A stretch of DNA of 64,000 bases from Heteronotia binoei (GCF_032191835.1 NC_083223.1:259160001-259224000); one strand, 5' to 3'; positions 1-26,839 are shown, counted from the first letter of the stretch. Translations and numbers: made by a program. Notes: a model not told the origin generated them from the sequence alone.

Positions 1-1582
1 CATGCTAGTTTTCTACACACGTGGCTACATACAGAGGACCTGTAAAAAGGAGTTCCTCTGAAGCTTTCAGCTAACCAGCAGGCAACCATCATTCTAGCCC
101 TGCCCAAACTGTCCTTTTGCTCACCCAATGGCATAGTGGCAATGGTTTCCATCAATAGTAACTGGACGGTTATTATGTCTCTGCCCACCTGCCCTTCAGT
201 GCAAATAGCACAATGGATTATTACTGGCTTGCCATCTGTTTTTAAGACTGGATTCTAATTTTTATGGTTTTATGATGTGGTTTTATTGTTCATACTTTTG
301 TTGTGACCCAGCCTGAGCCCGTTTCGGGGGAGGGCAGGATAGAAAATAAATAAATAAATAAATACATAAATTTATCTGCAGGAATGTTCTGTCAGGGAAG
401 GCCCACAGTTCGAAGCGGTACAGACAAGACACAGGGAGAATTAGGCCTCAGGTCATCAGGCCTCTGAGGGAAAATGTACAGATTGCAGACTGCTGAGCAA
501 CAATTTCATTCTGCTCCCACTTTCTAAAATCTAATGAAGAGGCTGGCAAACAACTTCAACACTTAATAGTACTTTTAAAAATAGTTTTGTAGATTTAAAT
601 TAACCATAAAATTAGGCGATCTGTAAGTTTTTGCTGTTTGCATTGGCTTGCCACTCCCCGCCACACAAAATTTCAGGCTACCGGGCTCTCTGGGGAAAAA
701 AGCAGGAAAACATCCCCCTCCACACAACAATTTCTTTTCCAGAGTGGATGGGAGATAGTAAAAAGGGTCTGGAAAATTTTGAGACCACCTGGTGTCAGCT
801 CAAGAAAGTTGGGGGCCTTCACAGGCACCTGGATGTAAGTCCACATAACTGGGAATAGGCAAGGTGTAGAAACTGAGAAGCCCCCCACCCTGCCTCTGAC
901 TTTTTCAGGTGTCCTAAAGATGGCAGTGCCATTAAGCTGGGTGAATGCTTCTAGACGCCTACACTTTCTAGTAGTCTTACCCCAGCTAAGACCTCACTTT
1001 ACCACACTGACTGCTTTTTTGTCAATGTTTCTTGTCTGCCTTCCTATCCCACCTGGAGCACTTTCAGGAAAGAACACAATCCAAACACAATTATTATGCC
1101 ATCTGGATGGCAAAGTGCACGTTTTCAAAGATCCCACCCAAACAGGTGACGTTTTCCTGTCATAAACCCCTCATGGCTGCCATTTTCCCAGTTATGCCAC
1201 CAACTGGTGGCACGGCAGGGAAAATGGTGGCTGTGAGGGGCTGACTAAAGAAGAGTGGATGAAGAAATCCCACATGGAATTTTCACTGCCAATGCATTCA
1301 CAGAGGTGACTGAAGCAACACAGAAAATCCTCATTGTGTGGCAGCAGCACTACCATGGTGGCTATAGATGTGGGAGTGTCAGCTGCCACCACCCTCACAT
1401 TATCCCGCAACTGGCAGTCCCTCCTTTCCGTCACACAATGAAGTCACAGACGCTGTCTTGATCCCAAGCCCCTAATTCTATCTCCATCTGCCAACGCCTC
1501 TAATCCTCAGGGTTTGGCACGGCAGGAAGCAGCTCTCATTGGCCTAAGATAACCCATATCATTTCCTCTTTGAGTTTTTTAC

Positions 1583-1671
1583 CTTCAGCACGTGGTGTCG
1601 GGGAGCTCCAGCTGGAAGACGGAAGAACCAACTTGGACCTTGAATGCAGCCTTTCAAGTTCCAACTGACAC
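1583..1671 (-). CDS. CENP-F-like paralog, coding exon 3 (R-CQLELERLHSRSKLVLPSSSWSSPTPRAE)
   Basis: atcctacag|G acceptor completes AG|G (Arg); G|GTAAAA donor; 89 nt open; CQLELER parallels CENPF CKSELER. Confidence 0.75.
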
Positions 1672-2284
1672 CTGTAGGATTTTTTAAAAAACAATGAGAA
1701 ATGGGGGGGGGGGCGGGGGGAGTAAGGGCTGCAGTCTGAGTGTCACTGTTGGAAGTATTCATCAAGAGCACAGAAACCTCTGTGAGAGAACTGGAGCCCC
1801 ACAGAGAAGTTGCTGTTCGTATAAATATTTTTTTGTAAAAAACAAGACATCTAAAAAGAAATGCCTAGGGCTATAGCTATAACGAAGTGAAGTGTAGCAT
1901 AGCTAAGAGGTGAAACTATGAACCACAAGTTCTGTGTTCAAATCTAACCTCTGCTATAGATTTTGACCCACTGGTCTTGGACAAGTTGCTGATTCCACCC
2001 ACCCCCACAATTCCATCCACCCCCACCCCTGGCCATATGCAATACAGGGATAATAATGATAGTGGCATACCTTACAGAGTTGCTTTAAAGATTATTGAGT
2101 TAATATGAAGCACTTTAAGTTCTCTAAAGCTCTTTATATAAGCGTTGTATTTTATAAAAATAAAAATGTTTCTGCGCTGAGATAAAACCAAATTACCTCA
2201 AAATCAGGTACACTGTGCATGTGTGTGTGTGTGGATAGCATGCTGACAGCCAATCAGTTTGTGGCAACCCAAGGCCCATAGGAT

Positions 2285-2440
2285 TTTAAAGGCAAGAGAT
2301 AAGCAGGGATTGTTTGCCATTGCTTTCCTTTGCACAGCAACCCCAGTTCTCCTTGGTAGACTTCAATCTACTAACCACGGCTAACCCTGCTTAGCTTCTG
2401 AGATCTGATGAGATCAGGCTGGTCAGAGGTATTCTGGCTG
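2285..2440 (-). mobile_element. 5S rRNA-derived SINE (5S-Sauria-like); further copies ~13290-13470, 13750-13930, 24840-24990, 30990-31150, 47600-47700
   Basis: Reverse complement of GATCTCAGAAGCTAAGCAGGG 5S box-A head fused to a ggcaatggcaaac...ccttgaaaa body. Confidence 0.7.
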
Positions 2441-2812
2441 CTATGATTTCCATAGATCATGCAAACTGAGAAAAAAAAAATGGCAAATATCTACTTATTT
2501 TGGGAAATGTATTCCAATTCTACTTAATTCATAGGGAAGAGCAAGCACCAATGCCCAGCCCCATGGTGTTTGGACATACAACGAAACTCTTCCTTCTAAC
2601 TTCTGAAATTTCTCTAAACACTAGCAGGACACTTTCAGTATATACCTGAAAGCTAGAAATATAGTCATTATTTTTAAAAACTGTCTTTTTAAGGGCACAC
2701 AGGTCCTGCAAACAGGTTTGCATTGTGTTCTTTGCAGCAGTAACAAATACTTGCAGCAGCCTTCACTGCCCTTTCGACGCAGATCCCACTGCTGACACCA
2801 GTGTTTACATAC

Positions 2813-3009
2813 CTACGCAGCTCTTCCTCAAGGTCTGCTTGGCGGCGGGTCGCCTGAGCTAGCTGAGCTTCAAGGCAGCCCTGCTGGGCTTCTTTGGCTT
2901 GCAGCTCCTGGGCTAGACGCTGGCGAGCTCGTTCTGTCTGCTCCCGGGCTTCAGCCAGGCTCCGGTTCTGCTGAGAAATGAGGGACCACGAGACTCTCTC
3001 TTCTTCGTG
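2813..3009 (-). CDS. CENP-F-like paralog, coding exon 2 (coiled coil HEEERVSW...DLEEELR)
   Basis: ttctttgcag|CAC acceptor, AG|GTATGT donor, 197 nt; phase 0 matches exon 1; ELQAKEAQ..LEAQL..LEEELRR parallels CENPF ELQVKESQ..EGQL..LEQELKR. Confidence 0.88.
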
Positions 3010-3075
3010 CTGCAAAGAACAAAGGAAGGAGAGCTTCTTAAATGAAGAGTTGCTATGTGCTCAAAAGTTATAGAG

Positions 3076-3400
3076 CAGGGTGGCCAAACTGTGGCTTGGG
3101 AACCACATGTGGGTCTTTCACACATATCATGTGGCTCTCGAAGCTCCCACTACCCTGTCGGCCATCTTGGAGAAGGCATTTCTCTCTTTAAATCATTCCT
3201 CCAAGCCAAGCCAGCTGGCAGCTTGGAGAGTGCATTTAAGGTTAAAGCTGCTTTCTTTTCACCTTTCCCTCCCTCCTCATTTATTTTCCTGCTTTCCTGT
3301 CTTGCAGCTCTCAAACATCTGACGTTCATGTCTTGTGGCTCTCAAACATCTGACATTTATTCTATGTGGCTCTTACTTTAAGCAAGTTTGGCCACCTCTG
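3076..3400. mobile_element. hAT (Charlie-like) MITE; relatives ~13945-14160, 24495-24794, 31583-31878
   Basis: TIR CAGGG(G)TGGCCAAAC / GTTTGGCCACC(C/T)CTG; 8-bp TSDs, e.g. gactaacg/gactaatg at 31575/31879 and gcttagag/gcttagaa at 24487/24795. Confidence 0.85.
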
Positions 3401-4230
3401 CTGTAGAGACATTCCTCTCCCCCAAAATATCATAGCCAGGGCTCTGGTCCTTCTGGATGCGCGCACACACACACATCACATTAAAAGATTAAATGAGAAG
3501 TCCATATGACCCAATGAGACATATTAAGTATACTTGGAAATATTTAAGTTTTGCAATATTTCCTTTTCCATGGTTAGGTTTTCAGTAAGGAATTTATGCC
3601 AAGTAAGAGACACAGAACTGTGGGTGGGTGTACAGTTGCCAGGTCTCCTTTAGCTACTGGTGTGGGGGGGGGGGCAGGAGACATAAGAGTTGCCAGTTTC
3701 AGGTTGGGAAATTCCTGGAAATTCAGGGATGGAGCCTGGGGAGGACAGGCACCTCAGTGGGCCCTCCAAGCAACTATTTTCACCAGGGGAACTGATCTCT
3801 GTAGTGTAGAGATGAGCTGTGATTCTGGGATACCCAGGCCCCATCTGGAGGCTGCCCCCCCAAAGTGTGTGGGATTTCTTTCTCTGGCATCTTGAGGTCT
3901 CGGGACTTGCTTTATTTTGATAAACTCAGAACTGAGATTCTTAACACTGCTGTCACATATTGCAATGCCCAATGAACCCATGGTTTCACAAAGCAACCTT
4001 AGATAAGCTGCTCTCTCACCTACCCCTAGGGGGCTGCCAGCTCTGAGTTGGGACGTAACTGGGGATTTTGGGGGCGCAGCCTGGGGAAGGTGGGGTTTGA
4101 GGAGGGAAGGGACCTCAGCAGGGTAGGGTCCACCCTCCAAAGTTCTTATTTTCTCCAGGAGGGCTGATCTTGGTCATCTGGGGACAAATTCTAATAAAGG
4201 GAGATCTCCAGGTGCCGCTTGGAAGCTGGC

Positions 4231-4727
4231 AACATAAGAGAAGCCATGCTGGATCAGACCAATGGCCCATCCAGTCCAACACTCTGTGCCACAAAGTGGC
4301 AAAAAAACCCAAGTGCCATCAGGAGGTCCACCAGTGGGGCCAGGACACTAGAAGCCCCCACCCCAAGCACCAAGAATACAGAGCATCACTGACCCAGACA
4401 GAGAGTTCCAACAATACGCTGTGGCTAAGAGCCACTGACAGACCTCTGCTCCATATGCTTATCCAATCTCCTCTCGAAGCTGTCTATGCTTGTAGCTGTC
4501 ACCACCTTCTGCGGCAGTGAATTCCATGTGTTAATCACCCTTTGGGTGAAGAAGTACTTCCTTTTATCAGTTCTAACCTGACTACTCAGCAATTTCATTG
4601 AATGTCCATGAGTTCTCATATTGTGAGAAAGGAAGAAAAGTACTTCATTCTCTACCTTCTGTATCCCATGCATAATCTTGTAAATCTCTATCATGTCACC
4701 CCTCAGTCGACGTTTCTCCAAGCTAAA
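4231..4727 (-). mobile_element. CR1 LINE 3' fragment
   Basis: ORF2 C-terminus RRLRGDMIEIYKIMHG...RGHSMKL...KYFFTQRVINTWNSLP...DKHM followed by a 3' UTR ending in a cttatgtt-type tail. Confidence 0.92.
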
Positions 4728-5595
4728 CCCTACCTCCCCCCCCCCTCAGTATCATGGGAAAACACCACCACTAGCATCCCTTGCAGGGAGGATTACTAAA
4801 ATAATGTATATGAACACTTGGGAAATACAAAAGTACCATGCTTTTGCAAGAGCTGGAGAGGCGTATCAGTTACAAATCTGGTTCAGAATCTCGGCCTAAA
4901 CTCACTGTATGTTTTTTTTAGCCACACAGTGGGTACATGTCCCCATCTGAAATTTGAGTAGGTGGCTGCTTTGTTTCAAAGCATAAAATCCAAAAATATA
5001 TGTGGGTGAAGAGTTCTCAAATAGGTTTGTGAAGATTAAAACAATCAGGCTTTACAGAAACACCCTGGTGCATAAAAGAGCATAAAAACTAAATCAAAGT
5101 GAGATTTTAAAAAGCAGAAGTCTTAAAAAGAAGAGCACGAAAACAGTCATTGATGAAATGCATGGGAGGGAGAGGGAATAAGGCAATCTCATTTGATTCC
5201 TAAAGAAAAACAAAACGGGTGTCAAGAAAGTCTCAAATAAGGTTATTCCACAATTGGGAAGCCACCACAGGAAAGTCCCTGTCCCCCTGCCCATCACAGC
5301 TTGCCTAATTTCACAGAGCACATTCTCAGAAGACGACCTCAGAGAACAGGCAGGTTTGTGTGAGAGCTGGTGGCACTTCAGGTAACCATAGTGGCCTTCC
5401 TTAAGGGGCTGCTGTCATGACTGCAGAGACAATGCACATGAAACTCTTTGGAAAAACATGTGAGGAGGTGGCAGGTTGGGTCAGAACGTGAAAGTCTAGG
5501 TTGCACACACAAAGTGGGTTGCAGAGTCTTAAGGGAGCCCTAATGCAAACTAAGTTGCCAGCCAGGTCCCCCCGACAACTGGTGGGGGATAGGGG

Positions 5596-5791
5596 GTAAA
5601 ATTGCCAGCTCGAGGTTGGGAAACTCCTGGAGATTTGGGGATGGAGCTTAGAGAAGACAGGGACCTCATTGGAGTTCAATGCCACAGAGTTCACCCTCCA
5701 GTCCATTTTCTCCAGGGGAACTAATCTCTGTAGTCTGGAGGTTAACTGTAGTTCCAGGGGATCCTCAGGGCCCACCTGGAGGCTGGCATCC
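5596..5791. mobile_element. Short (~190-220 bp) hAT MITE with (TA)GGGTTGCCA-type ends; copies ~3688-3856, 4028-4230, 6149-6343, 7862-8110, 8670-8830, 52040-52200, 55465-55690, 59185-59390
   Basis: Repeated body gggaaattcctggagattt...ccattttctccaggggaactgatctctg...ccacctggagg..ggcaaccct. Confidence 0.75.
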
Positions 5792-5856
5792 CTAACACAC
5801 TATTATTCAACTGCTCGCTCTCTCCTTTTGCAATGCATGGCCTACTTTACAGGGTG

Positions 5857-5977
5857 GTTGTTAGGACAGCAATGAAGATCCTGTGAATTTAGGGGGAAGT
5901 ATCTGTGAGTTTCCTGCATTGTGCAGGGGGTTGGACTAGATGACCCTGGAGGTCCCTTCCAACTCTATGATTCTATG
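5857..5977 (+). mobile_element. CR1 extreme 3' end; similar pieces 14820-15001 (+) and 63332-63385 (-)
   Basis: ggggttggactagatgaccctggaggtcccttccaactctatgattctatga terminus. Confidence 0.85.
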
Positions 5978-6359
5978 ACTACCAAAAATAAATGTATACA
6001 ATGCATTTTGAATGCTACAGAAAAACATGCTTAGCCATCAGTCACAGCCCTGCTATGATTTTTATTCTCCGATGACGCACCAGGCCAGCAGAAACATCTT
6101 TGTGGGCCCACCCCAAAGACAGGGCCCAACTCTTCTGCTCTGACCTTTCCTAATACCTGGAGACCTTGGAGGCGCAGCCTGGAGACAGTGGGGTTTGGGG
6201 AGGCGAGGGACCACATCTTGGTACAGTGCCATAGAGTCCACCCTTCAAAGCAGCCATTTTCTCCAGGGGAGCTGATCTCTGCCATCTGGACATCAGTTGG
6301 TAAAGCGGGAGATCTCCAGGCCCCACCTGGAAGCTGGCAACCCTACCCTTTCCGGTTAC

Positions 6360-6521
6360 CTTCTTTCTCTGCTTGTGCATTATGGCCTCCAGGGTGTCTA
6401 GCTGCACCTGCTTCTGCTGGCGCTCCTTCTGCAAGCGCTCCAAGCGCTGCTCCACCTCGGCTATGGCCCTCAGGGCCTGGACCGGCAGCCCCACCTTCCA
6501 TTCTTCGGCCGGCCAGCTCAT
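6360..6521 (-). CDS. CENP-F N-terminal-domain paralog, coding exon 1 (MSWPAEEWKVGLPVQALRAIAEVEQRLERLQKERQQKQVQLDTLEAIMHKQRKK)
   Basis: ATG at 6521 with an in-frame TAA just upstream; 162 nt (54 codons) ending AAG|GTAACC; aligns gap-free with the recalled human CENPF N-terminus MSWALEEWKEGLPTRALQKIQELE... Confidence 0.88.
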
Positions 6522-7192
6522 GATACCCAATTAGTGCCCCGGCTGGGCCTGCAGTCAGGCTTGCGATGCCAAGGCCTTCTTTTCCCCCACTCTCTCCGTC
6601 CTCCAAGGACAGATTGCTGGGATTATAACGCCAGCAAGGGTTTAGGGCCGCGTCAGAGCTGAAATCCCTCCTACGTCCGACAGCAGACGGGGCAGGAAAG
6701 GGCCAGTCACATGCACCTGACAGGGCCGTTCACAAGGTCATCCTACTCCGGATTTTCAACTCTGGGTTGCACTGGAGGCAATTGGGATTTCGGCCTTCCT
6801 CTCAGAGTTTGCAGGAAGAGTCCAAACTCAGGATGAGGAACAAAGAAACCAGGAGGGTGCTGTTTTCCACAGGACCGCCTTCTCTTCCCATTTGAAATGT
6901 TAAGCCCACCCATTTTTCCGGCATGTTCTTCTGGTCTCCCTCCTTTCTGTGAGAAAGTATGAATGAGGCAAGGGCCACCAATGCAGGCATGAAAAGTAGG
7001 CTTTCCTCCTTGGCGTAGCCAAAGCATAGAGAACGTAAGCAAAGAGCAGGTGAGATCTAACTTGTCAGGGCAGAAGCTGGCCAGTCCTCCGAAATTTACT
7101 GGTTTTGGTTTTCTCCACCGTTAGTTGTCTGGCAGATTTAGGGATTAGAAAAGTGCGCTAGTAATTCTCAATTGAAGATTTTAGGCCTACAG

Positions 7193-15400: not shown

Positions 15401-16132
15401 GAAACTATCCACAGAATCCAACCCCTTCTTTTAAACCTCTGCTCCGCTAACAGCAGCAGTGTTTCTTCCCCGGTGTGAGGAGCTTCCCTTTCATCCAGGG
15501 AAGGCTCCCTGTGCCGGTGGAAAGTGCTCTCGACTGGGATAAAAGCAGTCTTGAAAAAGGGATCGTTAAGAACGACACACACAAAAGATGCTAACACAAA
15601 CAGACTGTATTGTAAGAGGGGGGAGAAATGGGATCAGCACCAAAACTGCAGTGAGTCTAGTGTAGGACGAAAAAAAGAGGTTACCCCAACCACTGCAGCT
15701 CCGGCTCATGGGGCAGAGGAAGGGGAAGAAGGAAGAGAAAAAACCCCGCCCCAGTTTTGCCAGAATTCTATTTAAACAATGACATCACAGATAAAACTGC
15801 AACCCTCCCCACCCCCACCCCCCAAAACCCCCCTTCAATTAAAGTGCCAGAGTTCTAAGTATACTATTGGTATTCAGGAGACGGCAAGTGGGCAGGGGGA
15901 GGCATGTGGTTCAAGCATCAGGACCCAAAGTGCCAGCAAATGACCAACCAGCCCCACGGCTAAGGAAGAAGCTAGATTTTCCGACTACACAATTTGGGGA
16001 AGGGGCTGCGGCTATAACACTCGGTGCGTCCCCTGCCTCTGAACTGGCCAACTTCCGGCATTGGTAAGGATCCCCCACCCTGCTACCCCCAGGCTTCTGG
16101 TTCCCCCTCCCGCCCAAACCCTCCCATGTTCC

Positions 16133-16301
16133 TCAGTTCTGTGGGGTGGAGTAGAGGCTGTGGTGGTGGCTGCCAGAAACGGCCGCTTGCGAGAAGAGAA
16201 GGGGGGCCGTGGGAGGGTGACCCCCAAACCAGTCCTGCTCGCCGGTGCTGCCGTGGTTGATGGAGCCGTACCAGCTTCCGCTGCTCAGCCGCCCCGTCAG
16301 G
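16133..16301 (-). CDS. GPR137: GPR137 last coding exon (LTGRLSSGSWYGSI...HHHSLYSTPQN*)
   Basis: ctcttctcccttacag acceptor; ends like the mammalian tail PLLFSQ...HHHSLYSTPQT; total CDS 1185 nt = 394 aa + stop. Confidence 0.92.
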
Positions 16302-16992
16302 CTGTAAGGGAGAAGAGCGAGAGAGAGAGAGAGTGAGAGTCATCGTATGGCCTTTGGCAGCATTCTTGGGTTGGGAATCGAGTCTACACAGAACCTCCGA
16401 GTCAGAGCCAGATGAACAATTAGGCCAAGTAGGCACTGGCCTATAAGCCCTTAGGGGCCCTGGGCCAGTTTCTGCCTCCAGTTTCCCCCCTGCTTGCAGC
16501 CCTCCCAGCCTGCACACGTAGCCAGCTACTGAGCCGCTCTTTGCCTGGCTTGCCTAGTGCGGCTGATACTGGCGTCGTCACCAAGGTTGACTCTCTCTGC
16601 TTCTCCCCTGCAGCTTTGTCAAAGGGGCTTTTGAGAAGGTACCTGCAGGCTGCAGAAGGGGCCATGGGCAGCCACTCCAACTCTGAGATAATTTGCAAGG
16701 GGGCCCCTGAGATTTTGACTGCCTAGGGGCTTCCACAGGGTTTAATCCGGCCCTGCTCCAAGTTCAGGCACAGTCTCCCTTTAAATATCTGTTGCCAGGA
16801 GCTGAACAGCAGGGGATTTGTGCTCACCGGAGGCACTGGGTAGGCCAGCTTTGGCTTTTGTCTTAGAGGAACTGGGGGAAAAGCAACTGGAGCCAGTTCT
16901 TTATATGCACACTTCAGGAGCCCTCTGTGACACAAAATCAGAGGGCTGGGATCCTTATGCATGCCTACATACCAGGGAGGACGAGCGGTTAC

Positions 16993-17087
16993 CTGTTGGT
17001 CAGTCCTTCGCTATCACGCTGTCCAGGGTGGTCAAAGAAATAGGAACGGGAGACTCCAAGCTGCCGGTTGAAGACACGGCTGGCACT
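16993..17087 (-). CDS. GPR137: GPR137 coding exon 6 (SASRVFNRQLGVSRSYFFDHPGQRDSEGLTN)
   Basis: ccctgtgtag acceptor, AG|GTAACC donor, 95 nt; SRSYFFD motif. Confidence 0.92.
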
Positions 17088-17324
17088 CTACACAGGGAGG
17101 GAAAAGCCATTAGCAGGAACCTCGCATTCCCTTTCCTCCCTCTCCTCCTGCCCAAGTCCTGGCTGCTCAGCAACTTGTACCCAACGGACTGAAACCGCCC
17201 CTCCTGTCTGCTGGAAGGACACCAGAAGAGCCCTGCTGGATCAGAGCAGTGGCCCATTGAGTCCAGCATCCTGTCTCACATAGTGGCCTCAACCAGTTCC
17301 TCTGGAGGGCCAACAACAATAAGA

Positions 17325-17592
17325 AGATGACTGCAGATTTATATCCCACCCTTCTCTCTGAATCAGAGACTCAGAGCGGCTTACAATCTCCTATATCTTC
17401 TCCCCCCACAACAGACACCCTGTCAGGTGGGTGGGGCTGAGAGAGCTCTCCCAGAAGCTACCCTTTCAAGGAAAACTCCTGCGATAGCTGTGGCTGACCC
17501 AAGGCCATTCCAGCAGGTGCAGGTGGAGGAGTGCGGAATCAATCCCGGTTCTCCCAGATAAGAATCTGCATGCTTAACCACTACAACAAACA
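17325..17592 (-). mobile_element. tRNA-derived SINE (Squam3, gecko-type long variant); copies 19693-19949 (-), 23133-23416 (+), 30677-30940 (+), 35860-36124 (-), 44443-44728 (+), 53310-53410 (+, partial), 60675-61235 (-, interrupted)
   Basis: gagagccagtttggtgtagtggttaag...gggtttgattcccc head, ctcagccccacccacctcacagggtgtctgttgtggg core, gatataaatccaatatcttc tail. Confidence 0.85.
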
Positions 17593-18354
17593 GGGCAGAG
17601 AGGCCGAGGCCTTCCCCTGATGTTGCCTCCTGGCACTGGGATTCAGAGGCTAAGTGCATCTGAATACTGACAACCAGATTTCAATCCAGCCGCACCTGAG
17701 AGACCAACAAGATTTACAGGCTATAAGCTTCTGGGAGTCTGCTCCCTTCGTCAGCTTCTCTTTGTTGAAAGCTCATATTACAAAAATCTTGTTGGTATCT
17801 AAGGTGCACGCGGACTCGAATCTTGCTGTTCTACCACAGACCAACATGGCTACTCACTGCAACTAAATATGGAGGCTCCCTTTAGTCACCGTGGCTAGCA
17901 GCCATGGATGGACCTCTCCACCATGAATCTGTCTCAATTCCCTTTTCAGGATCATGGCCATCACTGTGAGCATTGGCTGCGAATTCCATCATTTAACTAT
18001 TGTGGATTTAATGCATGCCAATTGGTGCTGATTTGGTCAGTACCACGTCTCAGCATCCACAAGAGGAGAAGATTGTGGTGTGGAGAACAGGCTAGTGCCC
18101 TCAACACTGCTAAGATCCGTCTAGCTCTTTTTACTTTCCCCCATGGCAATGAGGACTAGAAACTTGTTCTTTTAAAACAAACAAACCTGAACATACTACA
18201 TTGCATCAAATCTTCAAACATGATTCTGTTCAATATAAAATGCTTGGGGCCAATGGGAAGCCTGGAAACCCAACCCCGCCCACCCAACTTCAGGTCTTGC
18301 TTCCATCATACACTGATCTGGATTACTCCTCTCCAGCCCCACCCCCCCTCTCAC

Positions 18355-18483
18355 CATATCCTGAGCAGGCCGGTGCACCCGGAAGAATCCAACCAACAAT
18401 GCAGTGGGCAGCAGTTCCCAAACGAAGAGGATGAGGCCAAAGACGATGTATCCTTGGTCTCCTAAGTCTGTGATTAGATCTGC
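18355..18483 (-). CDS. GPR137: GPR137 coding exon 5 (ADLITDLGDQGYIVFGLILFVWELLPTALLVGFFRVHRPAQDM)
   Basis: atcacag acceptor, ATG|GTGAGA donor, 129 nt. Confidence 0.95.
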
Positions 18484-20373
18484 CTGTGATGGGAGCAGAC
18501 AGAAGACAGATCAGATCCCCGGTGGAGAGTGGACCTCTGAACCAACACTCCCCACTTTAATATCCCAGTGAGGCTAGCAGGGTAGCATCAGCGGAGCCAA
18601 CTCCACAAGATTTCAGAGACATGAGCCACATGCTATGGCAGAAGGCAAAGTAATGCCCCATGGTTGGAGGGGCAGTGGCAAAGCTAAGGCTGGCATGCAG
18701 AAGTGCCCCAGGTCCAGTCCTCTGGCAAAGGATCTCAGGTAGCTGATATTGGGGGGGGGGGGGGGAGGTACTCCTTTTTCTGACTCTGAATAACTGCTGC
18801 TGGTCAGAGTACACAACTGAGGTAAATGGTCCAAAAGTAAAATTATTTTTCAACCCCCCCCCCTCAAAAAAACATGCCCATCTCCTTCTTCTGTATTTTG
18901 GGTGGAAGCTGCGTGCATACAAAAGTTAGCCAGTCCCCCGGAAGACCAGGTCTCAAGCCATCTAGAGAGAACAGCCAAGTCCCACCCTGGCCAATGGGGC
19001 TATCCATAAATAAACAGAGCATCCTACTGTGTAATTTCTGCATTGTTTAACATATGTTAGTATATCTGCTTTGTTTCCACTTTGTTTTAGATTTTTGCTT
19101 GGGTTTAGTTTTCAGCTATCCTAATCCTACTTACACTGCTTATTGGATGTCCCATTCTATTGATTTGCCATGACTTAGAACAGGGTTTTTTTGAGCCTGT
19201 GGGCACATCTGGAGTTTTGGGAGGGGGTGGTGAGCGCCTCCCTCCAAAAATGGCTTCTGCAAGAGGCAGAAGCAAATGCCAAATGGCTTCTGCAGGAAGC
19301 AGAGCCAAATGGAATGCCTCTCTCTCCTCATGCCTCCTAAAGAAGGAAAGCCTGAAGGGGGAGTGGCCTAAGAACCATGTGGCCTAAGAAGAGCCCAGGT
19401 GCTTACAGCTTCTCCTAATCCTCCAGTGGAAATCTGAATGCAGGCAGCCAATAACAAGCCCTGCCATACGAGAGCTCCACCCACTTCCTGAAAAGCTCAG
19501 AGGACACCAAGAGAAGTCCTGGCAGATGCCACTGACTTACATGGTGCAATCCGCCATGAATCTCAGTGAGAAAGACAGATTAAGTAATGTAAATAAAATG
19601 AATTAAAAAAGAATGAGATTCAAGCATGGTTAGATGGATCATGTCACGGATGGATGCAATTCCACAGGCATTGCCAAAAGTCCCTACTTTGAAGAAGAAG
19701 ATATTGGATTTCTATCCCACCTATACTTTGAATCTCAGAGTGGTCACACTCTCCTTTACCTTCCCCCCCCACAACAGACACCCTGTGAGGTAGGTGGGGC
19801 TGAGAGAGCTCTTACAACAGCTGCCCTTTCAAGGACAACTCCTAGGACCCAAGGCCATTCCAGCAGCTGCAAGTGGAGGAGTGGGGAATCAAACCTGGTT
19901 CTCCCAGATAAGAGTCCGTGCACTTAACCACTACACCAAACTGGCTCTCAAAATAAATTAAAAAGAATGAGATTCAGGCATGGTTAGATGGATCCTGTCT
20001 GGACCAATGCAATTCCACAGGCATTGTCAAAAGTCCCTACTTTGCAAGCTCAGTCCTTCCTAATACCTCCTCTGACGAGGCTGGCTGCAGTTTATACAAC
20101 AAAGAGAAAAAGGCCTTGGAACACGTGCCTTCTCCTGAGTTAGACCCCTGGTCTTTCAACTTACTGTCTGCTCTGACTGGCAGCAGCTCTCCACAGTGTC
20201 AAGCAGAAGTCTTTCACTTCACCTATTTGATCCTCGTAGCTGGACATGCCAGGGACTGGACCTGGAACTCTACATCACCATATCAGATGAGACCTTCCAC
20301 TGGGAAAATGCGCTTCAAAGCTCCGCCCAGAGGAGCTGCAGCCCTGCCCTGCCCATGGCCCAGCTGTGCTCAC

Positions 20374-20523
20374 CTGGTCCGATACGTTGTACCAGTCATA
20401 GTCGAAAGAGTCAAGACGGGTGCGGGAGGAGAGAGCCAAGGCTGCCAGGTTGTAGCAGGCTCGACTGGCGTATAGCAAGACGATGGTGCCACCCATGGCA
20501 GCGGTTTGGCACAGGGTGGTGCC
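20374..20523 (-). CDS. GPR137: GPR137 coding exon 4 (GTTLCQTAAMGG...DYDWYNVSDQ)
   Basis: ttaacag acceptor, CAG|GTGAGC donor, 150 nt; family motifs LYASRACYN and DYDWYNVSDQ. Confidence 0.96.
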
Positions 20524-22657
20524 CTGTTAAGGGAAGAGGCAGGCAGGTAAGGAAGACTGGATGGCCAAGGGGTAGACCTCAGGGTCCACAGCAACAAAGA
20601 TCCTTGCGGCATCTAAAATGCTAGTAAGTTAATTGTGGTGGTGGCCACTTTGCCAGAAGCAAGAGATGGTCAGAAGAACCTAAGAACAGCTCTGCAGGGT
20701 CAGGCCAAAGGTCCATCTAGTCTAGTATTCTGTTTCCCAAAATGCCTTGGGGAAGCCCATCAGCGGGGCATGACAGCAGCATCCTCCTTATCCTGTTGCC
20801 CCACCCCAACGCAACTGGTATTCACAAGTGCACTGCATCTGGGCATGGAGATTCTCCACTTAGCTTCTTTTAAAGATTTTGTAACATCCAGCCTGATGAA
20901 GAGGTCTGGTGAACTTGAAAGCTTGTCCAATGTTTTGTGTCCTTTGGTTGGTCCCTTATAAATGATATTGCATAGATCTTGTTATTTGGATTTTGCATGG
21001 CTGCACATCTTTACCCATCCTCCATATGTGGCCTAGTTTGCATTAACCCACTAAAATTACAGCGACCATCCTACAAGCAAAAACTAGGCCCTCTAGTATT
21101 CCTGGATTGCCAGCATAAGGAAATCAAGTTCATGGCCTTGGGATTATACAACATGACACCAACCAAAGTCATCTCAGTTAAGTTACATGCTGAATACAGA
21201 GAAGGGGAAAACATCACAAGAAGCCAGCAAGAGGCAGAGGTCTGTCACAAGGATCCTCAAAGCACAGACAAATACCAGATCTAATTCAAATGAACATCAG
21301 ATTCGATTCAGGCAGGTGAAACCCATTCCTAGCTAGTTGCCACTGGTAATGAATAAGTGCAGCAACAGTGATAGTCTGCTTAAGGGATAGATAGCTTCTG
21401 TGGCATGATAAATTCCAGTGTGTTAGCTGTGCTAGAGCAACAGCAAAACCGGTATGTTGTGGCGGTACCTTAAAAATGCCAATAGATTTACTGCAGCAAA
21501 AGCTATGGCAGGACTAGAGCTCCTGAACGCATTTGAGGGGCTGTGGTGGTCCACAAAAATTAAATCTGCAAACTCGTTCTTCCATCAAGGGCATAAGAAC
21601 ATCAGAAGAGCCCCGCTGGATCAGACCAGTGGTCCATCTAGCCCAGCATCCTGTCTCACACAGCGGCAAACCAGTTCCTCTGGAGGAACAACAACAGGGC
21701 ACAGAGGCCAAGGCCTTCCCCTGATGTTGCCTCCTGGCCCTGGGATTCAGAGGCTGACTACTTCTGAACGCAGAGGTTCCCTTTAGTCACCATGACCTAT
21801 CCTCCAAAGTGCCATAAAAATCTCCGCTGTCTTTTCTGGAGTGTACCCCAGCCATCCCTGGGTTTTGCTGAAACCAGGTTCCCTCAGTATAAAGTTTGCT
21901 AATGAGCTCAAGATAAGAGACTGTTCAACAAAGAAAAAAGGGTTGGTTTTTATACCCTGCATTTTTTTATCTTAAGGAGATTCAAAGCAGCTCATAATGG
22001 CATTCCCTTCCTCTCCCTCCCACAGGCATTTTGTGAGGGAGGTGGGGCTGAGAGAGTTCTGAGAGAATGCTGACTGGCCCCAGGTCACCCAGCAGGCCTT
22101 ATGTGCAGGAAAGGGAAATCAAATCGAGCTCTCCAGATTAGACTCTGCCTGCTATTAACCGCCACACTGCACCAGCCCCCAGCCATCTTCATCTCCATGC
22201 CAGTCAACCAAAAGGCATTATATTGTTTTTGCCCTGCTTTTTGGCCAAACTTGGCTACCAGAGCAACTTACAGCAATTTTTTAAAAAAATTATGCAAATA
22301 CTAATTTTTTAAAAAAACAACACAATAAAGGTGTCAGGTGGAGGGAGGGACATTCTCAGCAAGTTCTATGCCCAGGCAGGACGGAAGGGATGACGCTAGA
22401 ATCCTCCCACGGCTTTGATGACAGCTGCCAAAGACACTGTATAACCTCCCTCCAGAAATGAAAGTTGGCATGCCCTCCAAGATGAGAAGACAGCCAGCTC
22501 TGGACCTGCAAGGCAGGGTTCAGGTGGTCTTGGGCGGTCTTGGGCAAAGCCTTCATTGCTCACCCCTTTTGTTACTTCAGTGGGTAAGATGGGCGTGGAA
22601 GACACGTCCAGGCCTCTTCTGCCATTCTGAGCGAGCCGTAATCTCAGCAGAACCTAC

Positions 22658-22883
22658 CTTGGCTTCCAGATAGATCCGCGTGGAAGGGGAGCCACGGGCC
22701 ACGAGGCAGAGACACAGCGCGAGAGAGACAGCCCCCAGCACAAACAGCGAGTCGTTGATGAGGACCCGTGCCAGGACCACGGCCCAGGGCTCCGCCCGGC
22801 GTGCCCGCACTAGCACGGCGCATGCCACGTTCACCACCAGGAAGAGGATGCTGGCGCCCAAGCATGCCCCCCGCACTGCCAAC
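22658..22883 (-). CDS. GPR137: GPR137 coding exon 3 (LAVRGACLGAS...IYLEAK)
   Basis: ttcccag acceptor, AAG|GTAGGT donor, 226 nt, phase consistent. Confidence 0.95.
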
Positions 22884-23637
22884 CTGGGAAGGAGAGAAAA
22901 GGATGGAGAAAGTCAGTCACGGCACAGCATGAAGAGCCCTGCTGGATCAGGGTTAAGAGGCCACCTAGTCCAGCGCCATGCCTTCAGCGGAGCCTGAGCA
23001 GATGCTTCTGAGAAGCATAATGACAATAGTCCTCCCAAGATCTGGGCGTTCAGTGGTACACTGCCTCTGAACATGGATGCTCTGTTTACAGGATAGCAGC
23101 CAACAGGCCTCTCCTTGGCCCTGAATTTGTTGAACCAGTTTGGTGTAATAGTTAAGTGCACAGACTCTTATCTGGGAGAACCAGATTTGACTCCCCACTC
23201 CTCCACTTGCAACTGCTGGAATGGCCTTGGGTCAGCCATAGCTCTCGCAGAGCTGTCCTTGAAAGGGCAGCTTCTGGGAGAGCTCTCTCAGCCCCACCCA
23301 CCTCACAGGGTGTCTGTTGTGGGGGAGGAAAATAAAGGAGATTGTGAGCCGCTCTGAGACTCTTAGATTCAGAGTATAGGGCAAGGTATAAATCCAATAT
23401 CATCATCATCTTCTTCCTTAGAAGGCTATCTAAGCTCAAGGCTTCCTAAGATCAGGGTTCCCCATGAGAAGCAAAGGTGTTTGAAGCCAAGCTCTCTCTT
23501 AACATCTTCCCCACCCTTTGCGTTTGCCCCACATTCTCCACTATCCCCCCCCCTACCCCTGCAAGAGGGAATGTGTGGGAAGGAAGGATGTGAGTGTTAT
23601 GATTTACAGACAAAACTGGTCACGCACGGATACTCAC

Positions 23638-23687
23638 AGGCCTCTGGTCAGTTCAGGGCGGTATTTTGCTTTGGCCTTGAAAACCAC
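23638..23687 (-). CDS. GPR137: GPR137 coding exon 2 (VVFKAKAKYRPELTRG)
   Basis: ttccttccag acceptor, CT|GTGAGT donor, 50 nt; matches the VVFKAK..RPE family motif. Confidence 0.93.
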
Positions 23688-25049
23688 CTGGAAGGAAGGA
23701 TTGGGGCCGGGGGGTGGGGGGAGAGATTAGCAGTACACAAGATGCAGGGATTGGGAAGTCAGCTTGAAACAACTGATCCGCCACCCCTCCTGCTGCCCTG
23801 GCCCAAAGCCCAAGAGGATGATAAAGGAGCTCAGTTTCGTCGGCATGGCCTGATACCTACACAGACAGATTCCCCCTCGCACCTAAACTGACAGGGTGGG
23901 AGAAGCCTGCACGCACGCTTCAGCACTCCCTAGGTCCAAGGTGACCTGTCTGCTTGCGCAAGGCCCACTAGGGTTGCGAAACACCAACAAGTAACTCATT
24001 CCAGAAAGGTAAATGACAAGCCCAGATATGGAAGTGACCTTTAGAGCAGTGCTATGGGGTACACAGGTGGGCAGACAGGCACACCTCTTCCTGTTTCTAT
24101 GCGTATGGGAGACGTCAGGGGAGGAGAGGCAAAGCAAAGCCCCTTCTAGATCCTCTCTGCCTTTGTTTTAAGTAATCCTTTTTCTTGTCTCGCAAGGATT
24201 AGAAACATGGCGATTTCAAGCTTGCTGGCTGACTGTGGACACAGAACTGGGTGTGGATTAAGGAGAAAGCCCCACCGCTCTGCAGATCCCTTCTGCAGAT
24301 AACCGGCTCTCAATTACCTATTGTCGAAAAGGGAATAACAAGTGTACCTAAGGGAAAAGCCTCCGGCTCACACGTTTTTGCTATCACTCAGGAAAAATGG
24401 CCCCAGAGCAAACTAATGTATGCAGTAGCTCGCAACTTTAGAGCCAGTAGCACACAAAGTAGTATTTTTGCTCACAAGACTCCACAGCTTAGAGCAAGGG
24501 TGGCCAAGCTGTGGCTCGGGAGCCACATGTGGCTCTTTCACACATATTGTGTGGCTCTTGAAGCTCCCACCGCCCTGGCAGTCAGCTTGCAGAAGGCATT
24601 CCTCTCTTTAAATCACTTCTCCAAGCCAAACCAGGTGGCAGCTTAGATAATGCATTTAAAGTTGCTTTCTTTCCATCTCTCTCCCTCCCTCCCCCATCTG
24701 TTTGCCTGCCTGTCTGCCTTTCTGTCCTGCGGCTCTTAGTCATCTGACATTTATTCTATTTGGCTCTTATGTTAAGCAAGTTTGGCCACCCCTGGCTTAG
24801 AAAGCGCATAGGTCGCAACTGATACACGGTGGCTCCATGACATTCCATCTCATGGGGTTTTCAAGAGATGAGCAGAGGTGGTTGGCCATTGCCTTCCTCT
24901 ACATAGCAGCCCCAGTCTTCCTCAGTGGCTCCCCATCCAACATCTGCCCGTTTAGCTTACAAGGTCTGGCAAAACTGGGCCTATTAGGACTGTTACAACA
25001 GTGCACTACTTAATAAATGGTCTAAGTTATTCACAGATGTTCTTGGGAA

Positions 25050-26395
25050 CCGTTTACACCAACCCTGCAAGGTCGACTATGATCTATTGACCCACCGCCT
25101 TGCCGTCGCCAGAATATGGGGGGGTAGCCTTGCAATGGTTTTCCTCCTTCCTCCGGGGATGGGGACAAAGGGTGATGCTGGGCGAGCAGACCTCCCTGCG
25201 ACACCCACTTATATGCAGAGTGCCCCTGGGAGCTATTCTCTCGTCCATATTATTTAACATCTATATGTGCCCCCTTGCCCAGACTGCCCAAGGTTTTGGC
25301 CTGGGTTGTCACCAGTATGCTGATGACACCCAGCTCTATCTGTTGATGGAGGCAGACCGTCTTCTGCCCCTGAACACCTGTCCGAGGCATTAGGAGCCAT
25401 AGCGGGATGGTTACAGCAGAGCTGACTGAAGTCAAATCCAACTAAGACGGAGGTCTTGTGCCTGAGCCGAGGGGAGGTGGGTTTGTGCACCCAACTCCCA
25501 GCCTTGGATGGCGCTGTTTTAGTGCTGACCCAACAGGTGAAGAGTTTGGGAGAGATCTTGGATGCCTCACTTTCTATGGAGGCCCAGGCCACGGCGGCTG
25601 CCGGGTCTGCCTTCTACCATCTGCGGCAGATCAGGCAGCTAGCACTATATCTATCCCCCCCCAAGACCTGGCCACAGTGACCCGTGCAATGGTCACTTCC
25701 AGACTAGATTACGGTAACTCGCTCTACACTGGCTTGCCCTTGAAACTGATCCGGAAACTGCAGCAGGTGCAGAACGCAACAACTCGCCTGCTGACTGCAT
25801 CACCTGTATGGGTGAGGATGCAGCCGGTGCTCCGTGGCCTGTGCTGGCTGCCTATAGAGTACCGGATCCATTTCAAGGTGTTAGTTGACAAAGCCTTACG
25901 TGGCCTGGGACCAACATACCTGCAGGACCATCTCTTCCTGTATATGCCCCGGAGGTTGCTTCGTTCGGCCTCCCAAGACAGGCTGACTGTCCCCAGCCCA
26001 AGAGATGCCCGTCTTGCCTCTACCAGGGCCAGGTCCTTCTCGGTCCTGGCCCAAACCTGGTGGAATCAGCTCCCTATAGAGATCCGGGACCTACCTGGCT
26101 TGCCTGTAAAATGGAGCTGTTCCACCAGGTCTTCGGGTGAGGCAGCGGGCATCTATCCATTAAATTGGTTGGCCTCCCCTACTGTACTATCCTACCGCAG
26201 TGATTTGCTGCACTGTCCTGCTACACCATCTTATCATATTGTTCTGCTGGATTATTCTGTTGTATTGAAGACTGTAATTGTTTTTTTTATTATGATGCTG
26301 CTGTGATTTTGTGATTTTATTATTTATGTTGTACTCTGCCCTGAGCCCCTATGGGGGAATGGGCAGAATATGAATAAACAAATAATAATAATAGT
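25050..26395 (+). mobile_element. L2-clade LINE 3' portion, degraded
   Basis: RT motifs HQYADDTQLY and TSRLDYGNSLY; aataaac(aat)n tail. Confidence 0.88.
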
Positions 26396-26839
26396 TTACT
26401 GTTACAATTATAACAGGTAGGAGGTCAAGGACAAAAAAGAGCGGCGCCACCAAGTGTATTCATGGCACAGGAGACATTTGAACTAGGAGTCTTTCAATTC
26501 ACAGCTCAGTCTCCTAGCCCTGATGTGGCATTTCCTACCAAGAAACTCTGGCAATGAGTTCAGTTGTAACTCTAATTTTTGCAGTTCAGACAGAGCAAGT
26601 GCCGATTTCTAGAGCTCCCAGACAAAGATACACGTACTCCACTGTTCCTCGTATGCCCATTTCACAGAACCAAAACACACAAGGATTTTGAGCTGAGTAT
26701 GTAGCCTTCATATATAACTAAGGCCCCTCTGGCACTCCTGTTTGCAAACTCTTGCCAAAGAGAGGCCCTTCCAGCCATTTTAATTTGGCGTTTCTACCCA
26801 CAAGCCACCCAGGCCGGCACACCTTCATGAGCATTTTAC

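What the first reader, a model, noticed from the sequence alone, without database searches (positions are those of the whole stretch)
1583..6521. Divergent CENP-F paralog next to GPR137: candidate whole-genome-duplication ohnolog not known from mammals
Seen: three phase-consistent exons (162, 197, 89 nt) encode ~149 aa that align without gaps to the recalled human CENP-F N-terminal microtubule-binding coiled coil, with only ~31/54 identities in exon 1. That looks too divergent for a reptile CENPF ortholog, which I recall being much closer to human in this segment. Established: human CENPF lies beside KCNK2 and near ESRRG (1q41), with GPR137B on 1q42. The paralogous block BAD-GPR137-KCNK4-ESRRA (11q13) has no CENPF-like gene that I know of. 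Inference: this gene sits where the 11q13 sister copy would be, downstream of GPR137, and may be an uncharacterised CENP-F-family microtubule or kinetochore protein retained in reptiles and lost in mammals.
Basis: partly seen in the sequence, partly recalled or inferred. Interest (0 to 1): 0.82.

Follow-up and report, generated by a model that had tools for sequence, protein, structure and literature searches.

The report
Ancient short CENP-F sister gene
The gecko has a real second CENP-F-family gene between GPR137 and a KCNK4-like channel gene; it dates to before jawed vertebrates diverged, was not found in mammals or birds, and keeps only CENP-F's N-terminal coiled coil and its mitochondria (Miro) binding motif.

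Summary
Three minus-strand exons (6521-6360, 3009-2813, 1671-1583) splice into 149 aa that hit Pfam CENP-F_N at E 6.5e-35. They are the first 3 of 11 coding exons of a 763-aa gene. That gene is already predicted in RefSeq as "centromere protein F-like" (Heteronotia binoei). The other 8 exons lie up to 28 kb beyond the window start.

The canonical CENPF (2522 aa) sits 54 Mb away on the same chromosome. Orthologs of the short gene occur in squamates, turtles, amphibians, ray-finned fish (zebrafish-derived name si:dkeyp-115e12.6) and sharks/rays. They form a clade (98/96) apart from CENPF. An AU test rejects a reptile-only duplication (p 0.0001).

Synteny mirrors the CENPF-KCNK2 arrangement: GPR137, then CENPF-like, then a K2P channel, in geckos; carp keeps the CENPF-like to K2P adjacency. 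Gecko dN/dS is 0.29-0.38 overall and 0.03-0.14 at the C-terminus. The ohnolog reading is therefore supported.

No mammal or bird member turned up, but that absence was not tested genome by genome.

My inference on function: the protein keeps the N-terminal coiled coil and an invariant copy of the Miro-binding FADI peptide. It lacks the leucine-zipper repeats, a detectable kinetochore core and the CaaX box. It is probably a microtubule-mitochondria adaptor rather than a kinetochore protein. No paper on it was found, and no RNA evidence was obtained.

The parts
6360..6521 (-). Coding exon 1 of the CENPF-like gene (162 nt, aa 1-54, ATG at 6521, ends in phase 0).
   Evidence: Translation. Exact match to RefSeq model P0164 aa 1-54. 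Same length and phase as exon 1 of the canonical CENPF.
2813..3009 (-). Coding exon 2 (197 nt, aa 55-120 plus 2 nt of a split codon).
   Evidence: The canonical CENPF has its intron at the same place, after aa 120.
1583..1671 (-). Coding exon 3 (89 nt, to aa 150). It is the last coding exon inside the window and marks the end of the N-terminal helix.
   Evidence: The AlphaFold model has a helix over residues 14-132 at pLDDT 87-97.
6522..6998 (-). Conserved upstream region: presumed 5' UTR and promoter of the CENPF-like gene.
   Evidence: Window 6343-6998 aligns to the Paroedura picta ortholog's exon 1 plus upstream DNA at 86.7% over 663 nt, well above neighbouring intergenic DNA. No transcription start was mapped.
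1..1582 (-). First part of intron 3. The gene continues beyond the window start with 8 more coding exons at G000:C1:259159133-259159183, 259157910-259158101, 259154884-259155021, 259142074-259142187, 259137855-259138760, 259136547-259136675, 259132784-259132954 and 259131894-259132031. The last two encode the FADI / PF10490 block.
   Evidence: Exact mapping of P0164 onto the fetched flank. Exon edges may be off by 1-2 nt at split codons.
15409..27295 (-). Upstream neighbour on the same strand: a GPR137-family gene. Its first coding exon lies within 26828-27295, another exon within 20278-20526, and its 3' end is near 15.4-16.4 kb.
   Evidence: ORFs found. The ESM Atlas feature search gives a GPR137_N cluster at score 0.94 with 209 shared features. 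In Paroedura and Eublepharis the gene called upstream of the ortholog carries PF27607 GPR137_N. Collinear alignment with Paroedura. Assignment to GPR137 rather than GPR137B/C rests on recalled sequence only.

Best explanation
This is a functional, ancient paralog of CENPF, here called CENPF-like. It arose before jawed vertebrates diverged, most likely in the early vertebrate genome duplications. It has kept its place in the GPR137 / KCNK4 / ERR-type nuclear-receptor block, which mirrors CENPF / KCNK2 / a second ERR-type gene.

In the gecko it encodes a 763-aa, mostly helical protein. It retains only two CENP-F modules. One is the first ~146 positions of the CENP-F N-terminal coiled coil; the N-terminal end of human CENP-F is cited as one of its two microtubule-coupling sites (reference list of PMC6428352). 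The other sits in a disordered C-terminal tail: an invariant copy of the 42-residue peptide through which human CENP-F binds the mitochondrial GTPase Miro (core FADI; F inserts into Miro's ELF pocket, D pairs with MIRO1 R263).

It lacks the CENP-F leucine-zipper repeats, any detectable kinetochore-core region and the farnesylated CaaX end.

Inferred mechanism: the protein dimerises through its coiled coils, attaches to Miro on the outer mitochondrial membrane through the FADI tail, and links mitochondria to microtubules through its N-terminus. That would make it a dedicated version of CENP-F's mitochondrial function rather than a kinetochore protein.

Shown: gene structure, family membership, age, synteny, purifying selection, motif conservation. 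Inferred: Miro binding, microtubule binding, cellular role.
For: Gene and family. Pfam finds CENP-F_N at E 8e-35 and PF10490 at E 3.7e-19 in P0164 and nothing else. Three intron positions are shared with CENPF: after codon 54, after aa 120, and at G|FADI versus G|FVDV. PMC6428352 places the mouse intron 16/exon 17 junction at the same G2871/F2872 site.

Age. In the careful ML tree the bony-vertebrate CENPF-like clade has support 99/94. With the shark/ray CENPF-like proteins added it is 98/96. The CENPF clade is 88/68, and the tree is rooted on a crinoid sequence. The AU test rejects a sauropsid-only duplication, p 0.00012.

Synteny. GPR137_N gene, CENPF-like, then an Ion_trans_2 gene on one strand in Paroedura; GPR137_N then CENPF-like in Eublepharis; CENPF-like then an Ion_trans_2 gene in carp. 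In the own genome K2P exons lie 40-48 kb downstream. The nearest K2P paralog lies ~450 kb downstream of the canonical CENPF on the same strand. ERR-type split zinc-finger exons occur near both blocks.

Selection. Gecko pairwise dN/dS is 0.29-0.38 overall, 0.19-0.32 for the N-terminal part and 0.03-0.14 for the C-terminal 80 aa.

Motif. Across 32 orthologs from ray to gecko the invariant columns include G717 F718 A719 D720 I721 P722, plus Y705 E706 P707 G709 L710 P711 and R732 R733. The tail is disordered in the model, pLDDT below 50 over residues 635-763. That fits the published criteria for Miro clients: a conserved F/L, an adjacent acidic residue, and a conserved disordered loop (PMC10897228). 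The human 2977-3020 peptide is necessary and sufficient for Miro binding, and G2988A or F2989A abolish it (PMC4538849, PMC6428352).

Complementary pattern. All 10 squamate canonical CENPFs checked lack FADI, and none of the listed squamate CENPFs carries PF10490. Turtle, crocodilian, bird and mammal CENPFs keep it.
Against: No binding, localisation or expression data exist for this protein. Read laying failed, and no indexed RNA run held exon 2.

The PF10490 block is historically annotated as an Rb-binding region and overlaps CENP-F's C-terminal microtubule-binding domain, so the conserved tail could serve another partner.

Reptile proteins keep only the first half of the CENP-F_N profile; the ray and the caecilian keep all 304 positions. 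Microtubule binding by the reptile protein is therefore uncertain.

Mice with CENP-F F2872A are healthy (PMC6428352), so the Miro link is dispensable in at least one lineage.

The CENPF clade has only moderate support (88/68), the lamprey placement is weak (90/53), and the tree rests on 203 columns.
Confidence: 0.6

Rival explanations
1. It is a second kinetochore/corona or spindle protein that works like CENP-F in mitosis.
For: It shares the CENP-F N-terminal domain. The zebrafish ortholog name appears in a G2/M marker module (PMC12891946). That list looks like the standard human G2/M list converted by orthology (my recollection of that list, not checked), so it is weak evidence.
Against: There are no PF10473 leucine-zipper repeats. 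A profile-profile comparison of the ~210 aa upstream of FADI in 27 CENPF-like proteins against the ~310 aa upstream of FADI in 13 CENPFs gives probability 0.1%; I take that CENPF stretch to include the kinetochore core (recalled position). There is no CaaX box: the protein ends in GTGV. It is a quarter of CENPF's length.
Confidence: 0.12
2. The conserved C-terminal block serves pocket-protein (Rb family) binding or nuclear import, making the protein a nuclear cell-cycle or differentiation regulator like the LEK1 fragments.
For: Pfam names the block 'Rb-binding domain of Cenp-F/LEK1'. PMC6428352 notes that the Miro-binding domain partly overlaps the reported Rb-interaction motif. A basic patch precedes the motif (alignment).
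Against: The invariant residues are exactly those shown to matter for Miro (G, F, D of GFAD), and the whole 42-mer is conserved. PMC6428352 begins to report a negative outcome for its Rb test of this region, but the passage I read is cut off.
Confidence: 0.13
3. It is a recent lineage-specific duplicate, or a decaying pseudogene of CENPF.
For: It is much shorter than CENPF, and its middle region evolves fast (dN/dS 0.37-0.44).
Against: Orthologs with the same two-domain architecture exist from rays to geckos. The AU test rejects a sauropsid-only duplication. Three geckos have intact 11-exon ORFs with dN/dS well below 1.
Confidence: 0.02

Closest known systems
CENP-F (mitosin / LEK1), the canonical vertebrate gene
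   Same: It has the N-terminal CENP-F_N coiled coil, with 56/133 identities to the same genome's CENPF. It has the C-terminal PF10490 / Miro-binding FADI peptide. Three intron positions are shared. A K2P channel gene lies downstream on the same strand, with an ERR-type nuclear-receptor gene further on.
   Different: It is 763 aa against 2522 aa in this gecko. It has no PF10473 leucine-zipper repeats, no detectable kinetochore-core region and no CaaX farnesylation motif. The FADI block sits ~45 aa from the C-terminus instead of ~125-130 aa (turtle, bird, cow). Only the first half of CENP-F_N is kept in reptiles. It forms a separate clade that diverged before jawed vertebrates split.
Predicted 'centromere protein F-like' genes in RefSeq, and the zebrafish-derived name si:dkeyp-115e12.6
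   Same: These are orthologs of this gene. They fall in the same clade and share the two-domain architecture; the two geckos and the carp checked also share its neighbourhood. The RefSeq model for Heteronotia binoei is this very gene.
   Different: They are automatic predictions with inconsistent names: rootletin-like, EEA1-like, GRIP and coiled-coil-like, or simply 'centromere protein F'. I found no paper that describes them as a distinct ohnolog or tests a function.
Miro clients that use an ELF-pocket motif (CENPF, TRAK1/2, MYO19, MTFR1/2/1L, VPS13D, Parkin)
   Same: It has a conserved F followed by A-D-I, as in CENPF and MTFR2. There is an adjacent acidic residue. The motif lies in a conserved, predicted-disordered stretch.
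   Different: Binding has not been tested for this protein. Membership of the client group is inferred from sequence only.

Membership tests
CENP-F family | CENP-F N-terminal domain (Pfam PF10481) | tested here: met
   E 6.5e-35 to 8e-35, 121 bits against a cut-off of 37.7. Only profile positions 1-146 of 304 are matched in the gecko; all 304 are matched in the ray and the caecilian orthologs.
CENP-F family | C-terminal conserved block (Pfam PF10490, Rb-binding / Miro-binding region) | tested here: met
   E 3.7e-19, 68 bits against a cut-off of 21, residues 699-737.
CENP-F family | Leucine-rich zipper repeats (Pfam PF10473) | tested here: not met
   Absent from five CENPF-like proteins scanned. 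Present twice in the same genome's CENPF.
CENP-F family | Kinetochore-core / Bub1-binding region upstream of the FADI block | tested here: not met
   hhalign of the upstream regions, 27 CENPF-like against 13 CENPF sequences: probability 0.1%, E 0.61. A remote relationship below this sensitivity is not excluded.
CENP-F family | C-terminal CaaX farnesylation motif | tested here: not met
   The CENPF-like protein ends ...EEGTGV. All 15 CENPFs aligned end in C-x-V-Q.
CENP-F family | Shared gene structure (intron positions and phases) | tested here: met
   Exon 1 is 162 nt and exon 2 is 197 nt in both genes. Both have an intron at G|F of the GFAD motif.
Vertebrate whole-genome-duplication ohnolog pair (CENPF / CENPF-like) | The duplication node predates the divergence of jawed vertebrates, and both copies are present in several classes. 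| tested here: met
   Both genes occur in ray-finned fish, amphibians, turtles and squamates. Cartilaginous fish have both kinds, sampled from different species. Clade supports are 98/96 and 88/68, and the AU test is. Whether this was the first or second round cannot be told; the lamprey placement is weak.
Vertebrate whole-genome-duplication ohnolog pair (CENPF / CENPF-like) | The two copies lie in paralogous chromosome blocks with other duplicated gene families. | tested here: met
   A K2P channel paralog lies downstream of each copy on the same strand. ERR-type split zf-C4 exons lie at C1:259.007-259.012 Mb and C1:202.82-202.85 Mb. An RD3-family gene and STX5 flank the carp ortholog. The names KCNK2/KCNK4/ESRRA/ESRRG are inferred from position and recalled human maps, not from gene trees.
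Miro ELF-pocket clients | A conserved F or L for pocket insertion with an adjacent acidic residue (PMC10897228) | tested here: met
   F718 and D720 (FADI) are invariant in 32 orthologs, as is G717, the equivalent of human G2988.
Miro ELF-pocket clients | The motif lies in a conserved disordered loop. | tested here: met
   The AlphaFold2 model has no secondary structure and pLDDT below 50 over residues 635-763, while the sequence there is the best conserved in the protein. This is a prediction only.
Miro ELF-pocket clients | Direct binding to Miro GTPase1+ELM1 | not testable with these tools
A binding assay is needed.

The most novel reading that the evidence does not exclude
CENPF-like is the dedicated Miro-dependent mitochondria-microtubule linker of non-mammalian vertebrates, and the two ohnologs have divided or traded this job. 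Squamates let the Miro motif of canonical CENPF decay while keeping it perfect in CENPF-like. Turtles keep both. Mammals, and perhaps birds, lost CENPF-like and keep the motif only in CENPF. If true, zebrafish si:dkeyp-115e12.6 offers a clean genetic handle on the CENP-F-Miro function, free of kinetochore roles. The physiological importance of that function is still open after the healthy F2872A mouse.
Probability: 0.35. Interest if true: 0.65.

Novelty: new member of a known kind. Interest (0 to 1): 0.5.

Why it matters
CENP-F is hard to study because one 3000-residue protein carries kinetochore, nuclear-pore, dynein, cilia and mitochondrial functions. This gene is a natural minimal version. 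It has kept only the N-terminal coiled coil and the Miro-binding peptide, under purifying selection, from sharks to geckos. That argues the Miro-binding function has long-term selective value, although mice lacking it look normal.

Fish or lizard cells offer a system to test that function in isolation. The decay of the Miro motif in squamate canonical CENPF, with CENPF-like intact, is a candidate case of function partitioning between ohnologs.

On the practical side, database names for this gene are inconsistent: CENPF, rootletin-like, EEA1-like and others. Orthology-based gene lists may also be conflating it with CENPF, as the zebrafish G2/M module appears to do.

Tried and rejected
RNA evidence. 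No junction or expression evidence was obtained.

Sequencing-run searches. The first search found three metatranscriptomic runs holding 6-7% of the region's words. A second search centred on exon 2 found no RNA holder. The first signal therefore cannot be attributed to exons and may come from intronic repeats.

Solved structures. The C-terminal 80 aa gave only a chance hit.

GPR137 exons. Pfam found nothing on the two ORFs; the ESM Atlas feature search was used instead.

Synteny at greater distance. There are no called neighbours within 10 kb in Gouania. No DNA was available for the ray. The Chrysemys model is not on record.

Third CENP-F_N-like locus on C2. It is rejected as an ohnolog. It is a 224-bp fragment 96.9% identical to canonical exon 1, with a destroyed start codon and a stop.

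Kinetochore-core homology. Not found.

Zebrafish G2/M list. It mentions si:dkeyp-115e12.6, but I reject it as expression evidence because the list looks like an orthology conversion of the human G2/M set.

Literature. Searches for a described CENPF paralog or ohnolog found nothing relevant. The ohnolog-database paper has no held supplements.

The search of earlier findings by words found nothing.

Complex prediction was not run, because no Miro sequence was obtainable under its input rules.
Full report
**What is in the window**

On the minus strand there is an ATG at 6521. It opens a 162-nt exon ending at a GT donor (6521-6360). A 197-nt exon follows (3009-2813), then an 89-nt exon (1671-1583), each with an AG acceptor and a GT donor. 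The phases are consistent.

The spliced 149 aa hit Pfam CENP-F_N at E 6.5e-35 (121.7 bits, cut-off 37.7), covering profile positions 1-145 of 304. Exon 1 shares 32/54 residues with Bos CENPF.

**It is not the CENPF ortholog**

A six-frame search of the window's own genome found two other CENP-F_N-like loci.

- C1:205.26-205.30 Mb holds a complete canonical CENPF. It has two giant coiled-coil exons and 16 mapped coding exons. It corresponds to the public protein P0188, 'centromere protein F [Heteronotia binoei]', 2522 aa.
- The locus on C2 is only a 224-bp fragment. It is 96.9% identical to canonical exon 1 and its 5' flank, its start codon is destroyed and it contains a TAG. It is a recent pseudo-exon and not relevant here.

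The canonical N-terminus is very conserved: gecko against cow is 46/54 in exon 1 and 109/133 overall. The window gene is 56/133 to its own genome's CENPF. Geckos therefore have two distinct genes.

**The whole gene**

A HMMER search of 1.84 billion representatives found 203 proteins with this domain. The best is a 798-aa 'centromere protein F-like' from the lizard Elgaria, 79% identical.

A word-indexed search with that protein returned 31 squamate and turtle proteins of 536-1227 aa. Most carry both PF10481 and PF10490. Among them is P0164, 'centromere protein F-like [Heteronotia binoei]', 763 aa, on a contig of 285,831,653 nt. That is the length of the window's contig.

P0164 maps without mismatch onto 11 coding exons. 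Three lie in the window and eight lie beyond its start, down to C1:259131894. The gene spans about 34.6 kb. So the gene is already predicted by the RefSeq pipeline. I found no paper about it.

**Age of the duplication**

Names recovered for the hits show the same short gene in several groups:

- salamanders (2047-2227 aa) and caecilians (1340-1431 aa);
- bichir relatives and sturgeon (about 2100 aa);
- many teleosts, where UniProt transfers the zebrafish name si:dkeyp-115e12.6;
- as 'CENPF-like' proteins of 1720-1778 aa, a stingray and a sawshark.

Canonical CENPF co-exists with it in ray-finned fish, amphibians, turtles and squamates. For cartilaginous fish the canonical CENPF sampled came from a different species (a catshark).

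A careful maximum-likelihood tree used the N-terminal domain plus the C-terminal block (46 proteins, 203 columns, rooted on a crinoid sequence). The results were as follows:

- The bony-vertebrate CENPF-like clade has support 99/94, and its internal order follows the species tree.
- The shark/ray proteins are its sister at 98/96.
- All canonical CENPFs form a separate clade at 88/68.
- A lamprey sequence joins the CENPF-like side only weakly (90/53).

Forcing all sauropsid sequences of both genes into one clade costs 75.7 log-likelihood units and is rejected (p-AU 0.00012). The duplication therefore predates the split of jawed vertebrates.

**Synteny**

In the gecko the minus strand reads, in order:

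- a GPR137-family gene (exons within 27295-26828 and 20526-20278);
- CENPF-like;
- K2P channel exons 40-48 kb beyond the window start;
- ERR-type split zinc-finger exons about 150 kb beyond it.

Paroedura shows GPR137_N gene, CENPF-like, then an Ion_trans_2 gene on one strand. Eublepharis shows GPR137_N then CENPF-like. Carp shows STX5, an RD3-family gene, CENPF-like, then an Ion_trans_2 gene.

The closest paralog of the K2P exon in this genome (62% identity) lies ~450 kb downstream of canonical CENPF on the same strand. Another ERR-type receptor lies ~2 Mb further on. This matches the recalled human arrangement CENPF-KCNK2-ESRRG against GPR137-KCNK4-ESRRA. The human map is from memory and was not tested here.

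Timing and paralogous blocks together support a whole-genome-duplication origin. Which round cannot be decided.

**It is a working gene**

Three gecko orthologs have intact 11-exon ORFs. Pairwise Nei-Gojobori dN/dS values are:

| Region | dN/dS |
|---|---|
| Whole protein | 0.29-0.38 |
| N-terminal 135 aa | 0.19-0.32 |
| Middle region | 0.37-0.44 |
| C-terminal 80 aa | 0.03-0.14 |

Direct RNA evidence could not be obtained.

**Anatomy of the protein**

Pfam finds only CENP-F_N (first half) and PF10490 in the gecko, turtle, caecilian, carp and ray proteins. The same genome's CENPF has the full CENP-F_N and two PF10473 leucine-zipper repeats, but no PF10490.

The AlphaFold2 model (32-sequence alignment, mean pLDDT 62) shows confident helices at 14-132, 216-278, 323-379 and 483-584, and a short one at 615-634. 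The linkers are disordered, as is the tail from 635 to the end.

Conservation from ray to gecko is concentrated in residues 1-139, two mid coiled-coil blocks (about 326-364 and 497-556) and 672-748. Invariant columns include Y705 E706 P707 G709 L710 P711 V713 V714 G717 F718 A719 D720 I721 P722 G724 C727 P728 R732 R733.

Three intron positions are shared with CENPF. One falls exactly at G|F of the GFAD motif. The mouse intron 16/exon 17 junction also lies there (PMC6428352).

**What the C-terminal block is**

Human CENP-F residues 2977-3020 are necessary and sufficient for direct Miro1/2 binding. [quoted passage not shown] The ELF-pocket motif is FADI: F2989 inserts into MIRO1's ELM1 pocket, and D2991 pairs with R263. 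Clients share a conserved F/L, a neighbouring acidic residue and a conserved disordered loop (PMC10897228).

The CENPF-like tail aligns over this whole peptide and keeps G, F, A, D, I invariant in a predicted disordered region. All three published sequence criteria are met.

By contrast, the ~210 aa upstream of FADI in CENPF-like show no profile similarity to the ~310 aa upstream of FADI in CENPF (hhalign probability 0.1%). I take that CENPF stretch to include the kinetochore core, from its recalled position. The CaaX box is also missing.

I therefore infer a microtubule-Miro adaptor rather than a kinetochore protein. This is inference. The block is also annotated as Rb-binding, and reptile proteins retain only half of CENP-F_N.

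**A complementary pattern**

In ten squamate canonical CENPFs the FADI region is degenerate or deleted: GFVDV in this gecko, GSSDV in Podarcis, absent in Anolis, Pogona and Python. The downstream SPY-ILRR segment is gone as well. Turtle, bird, cow and coelacanth CENPFs keep FADI, and alligator has the close variant FGDI. The precomputed Pfam lists agree.

Squamates thus keep a perfect Miro motif only in CENPF-like. Turtles keep it in both genes. Lineages where I found no CENPF-like keep it in CENPF. This suggests redundancy followed by partitioning, and it needs experimental testing.

**Limits**

- Absence from mammals, birds and crocodilians rests on no such protein appearing among the hits. 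Representatives are clustered at 50% identity, and some short CENPF-like fragments remain unnamed.
- The names KCNK4, KCNK2, ESRRA and ESRRG are positional inferences.
- The phylogeny uses short conserved blocks.

**Verdict**

The gene is a predicted but unstudied member of the CENP-F family. It is of moderate interest, mainly for what it implies about the CENP-F-Miro function.

Noticed in passing
G000:C1:205262548-205297277 (canonical CENPF, outside the window); proteins P0188, P0027, P0187, P0190, P0216, P0197, P0194, P0236, P0189, P0198: All ten squamate canonical CENPFs checked lack the FADI Miro-binding motif, and none of the listed squamate CENPFs carries Pfam PF10490. The region is degenerate (GFVDV, GFSDT, GSSDV) or deleted. 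Turtles, crocodilians, birds, mammals and coelacanth keep it. The CaaX end is kept in all.
   Followed up: partly
G000:C2:95521055-95521278 (locus L005): A 224-bp fragment 96.9% identical to exon 1 of canonical CENPF plus ~59 nt of its 5' flank. The start codon is destroyed and a TAG lies in frame. No other CENPF exons occur within the 60 kb fetched around it. It is a recent fragment copy, not a third paralog.
   Followed up: yes
L030:1-4123 (carp) and L031:2107-3474 (Scleropages): An RD3-family gene lies just upstream of the fish CENPF-like gene, and in carp STX5 does too. As I recall, RD3 sits near CENPF on human 1q32-q41. This may be another duplicated family in the same pair of paralogous blocks.
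   Followed up: no
G000:C1:259006650-259011900; C1:202824928-202852715; C21:51611183-51628290: Three nuclear-receptor zinc-finger domains are split into two exons at the same profile positions. They lie on the same chromosomes as the three closest K2P paralogs (C1:259.11, C1:204.81, C21:41.59 Mb), though the C21 pair is ~10 Mb apart. This fits ESRRA/ESRRG/ESRRB beside KCNK4/KCNK2/KCNK10. No CENPF-like gene was found on C21.
   Followed up: partly
I did not examine it. BAD next to GPR137 would fit the recalled 11q13 gene order.
   Followed up: no
Database names of orthologs: The same gene is variously named centromere protein F, centromere protein F-like, rootletin-like, early endosome antigen 1-like, GRIP and coiled-coil domain-containing protein 1-like, WW domain-binding protein 11-like, testis-specific serine kinase substrate-like and PAN1-like. 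In fish it is often simply 'centromere protein F', which may be why the zebrafish name appears in a G2/M list that looks orthology-derived.
   Followed up: partly
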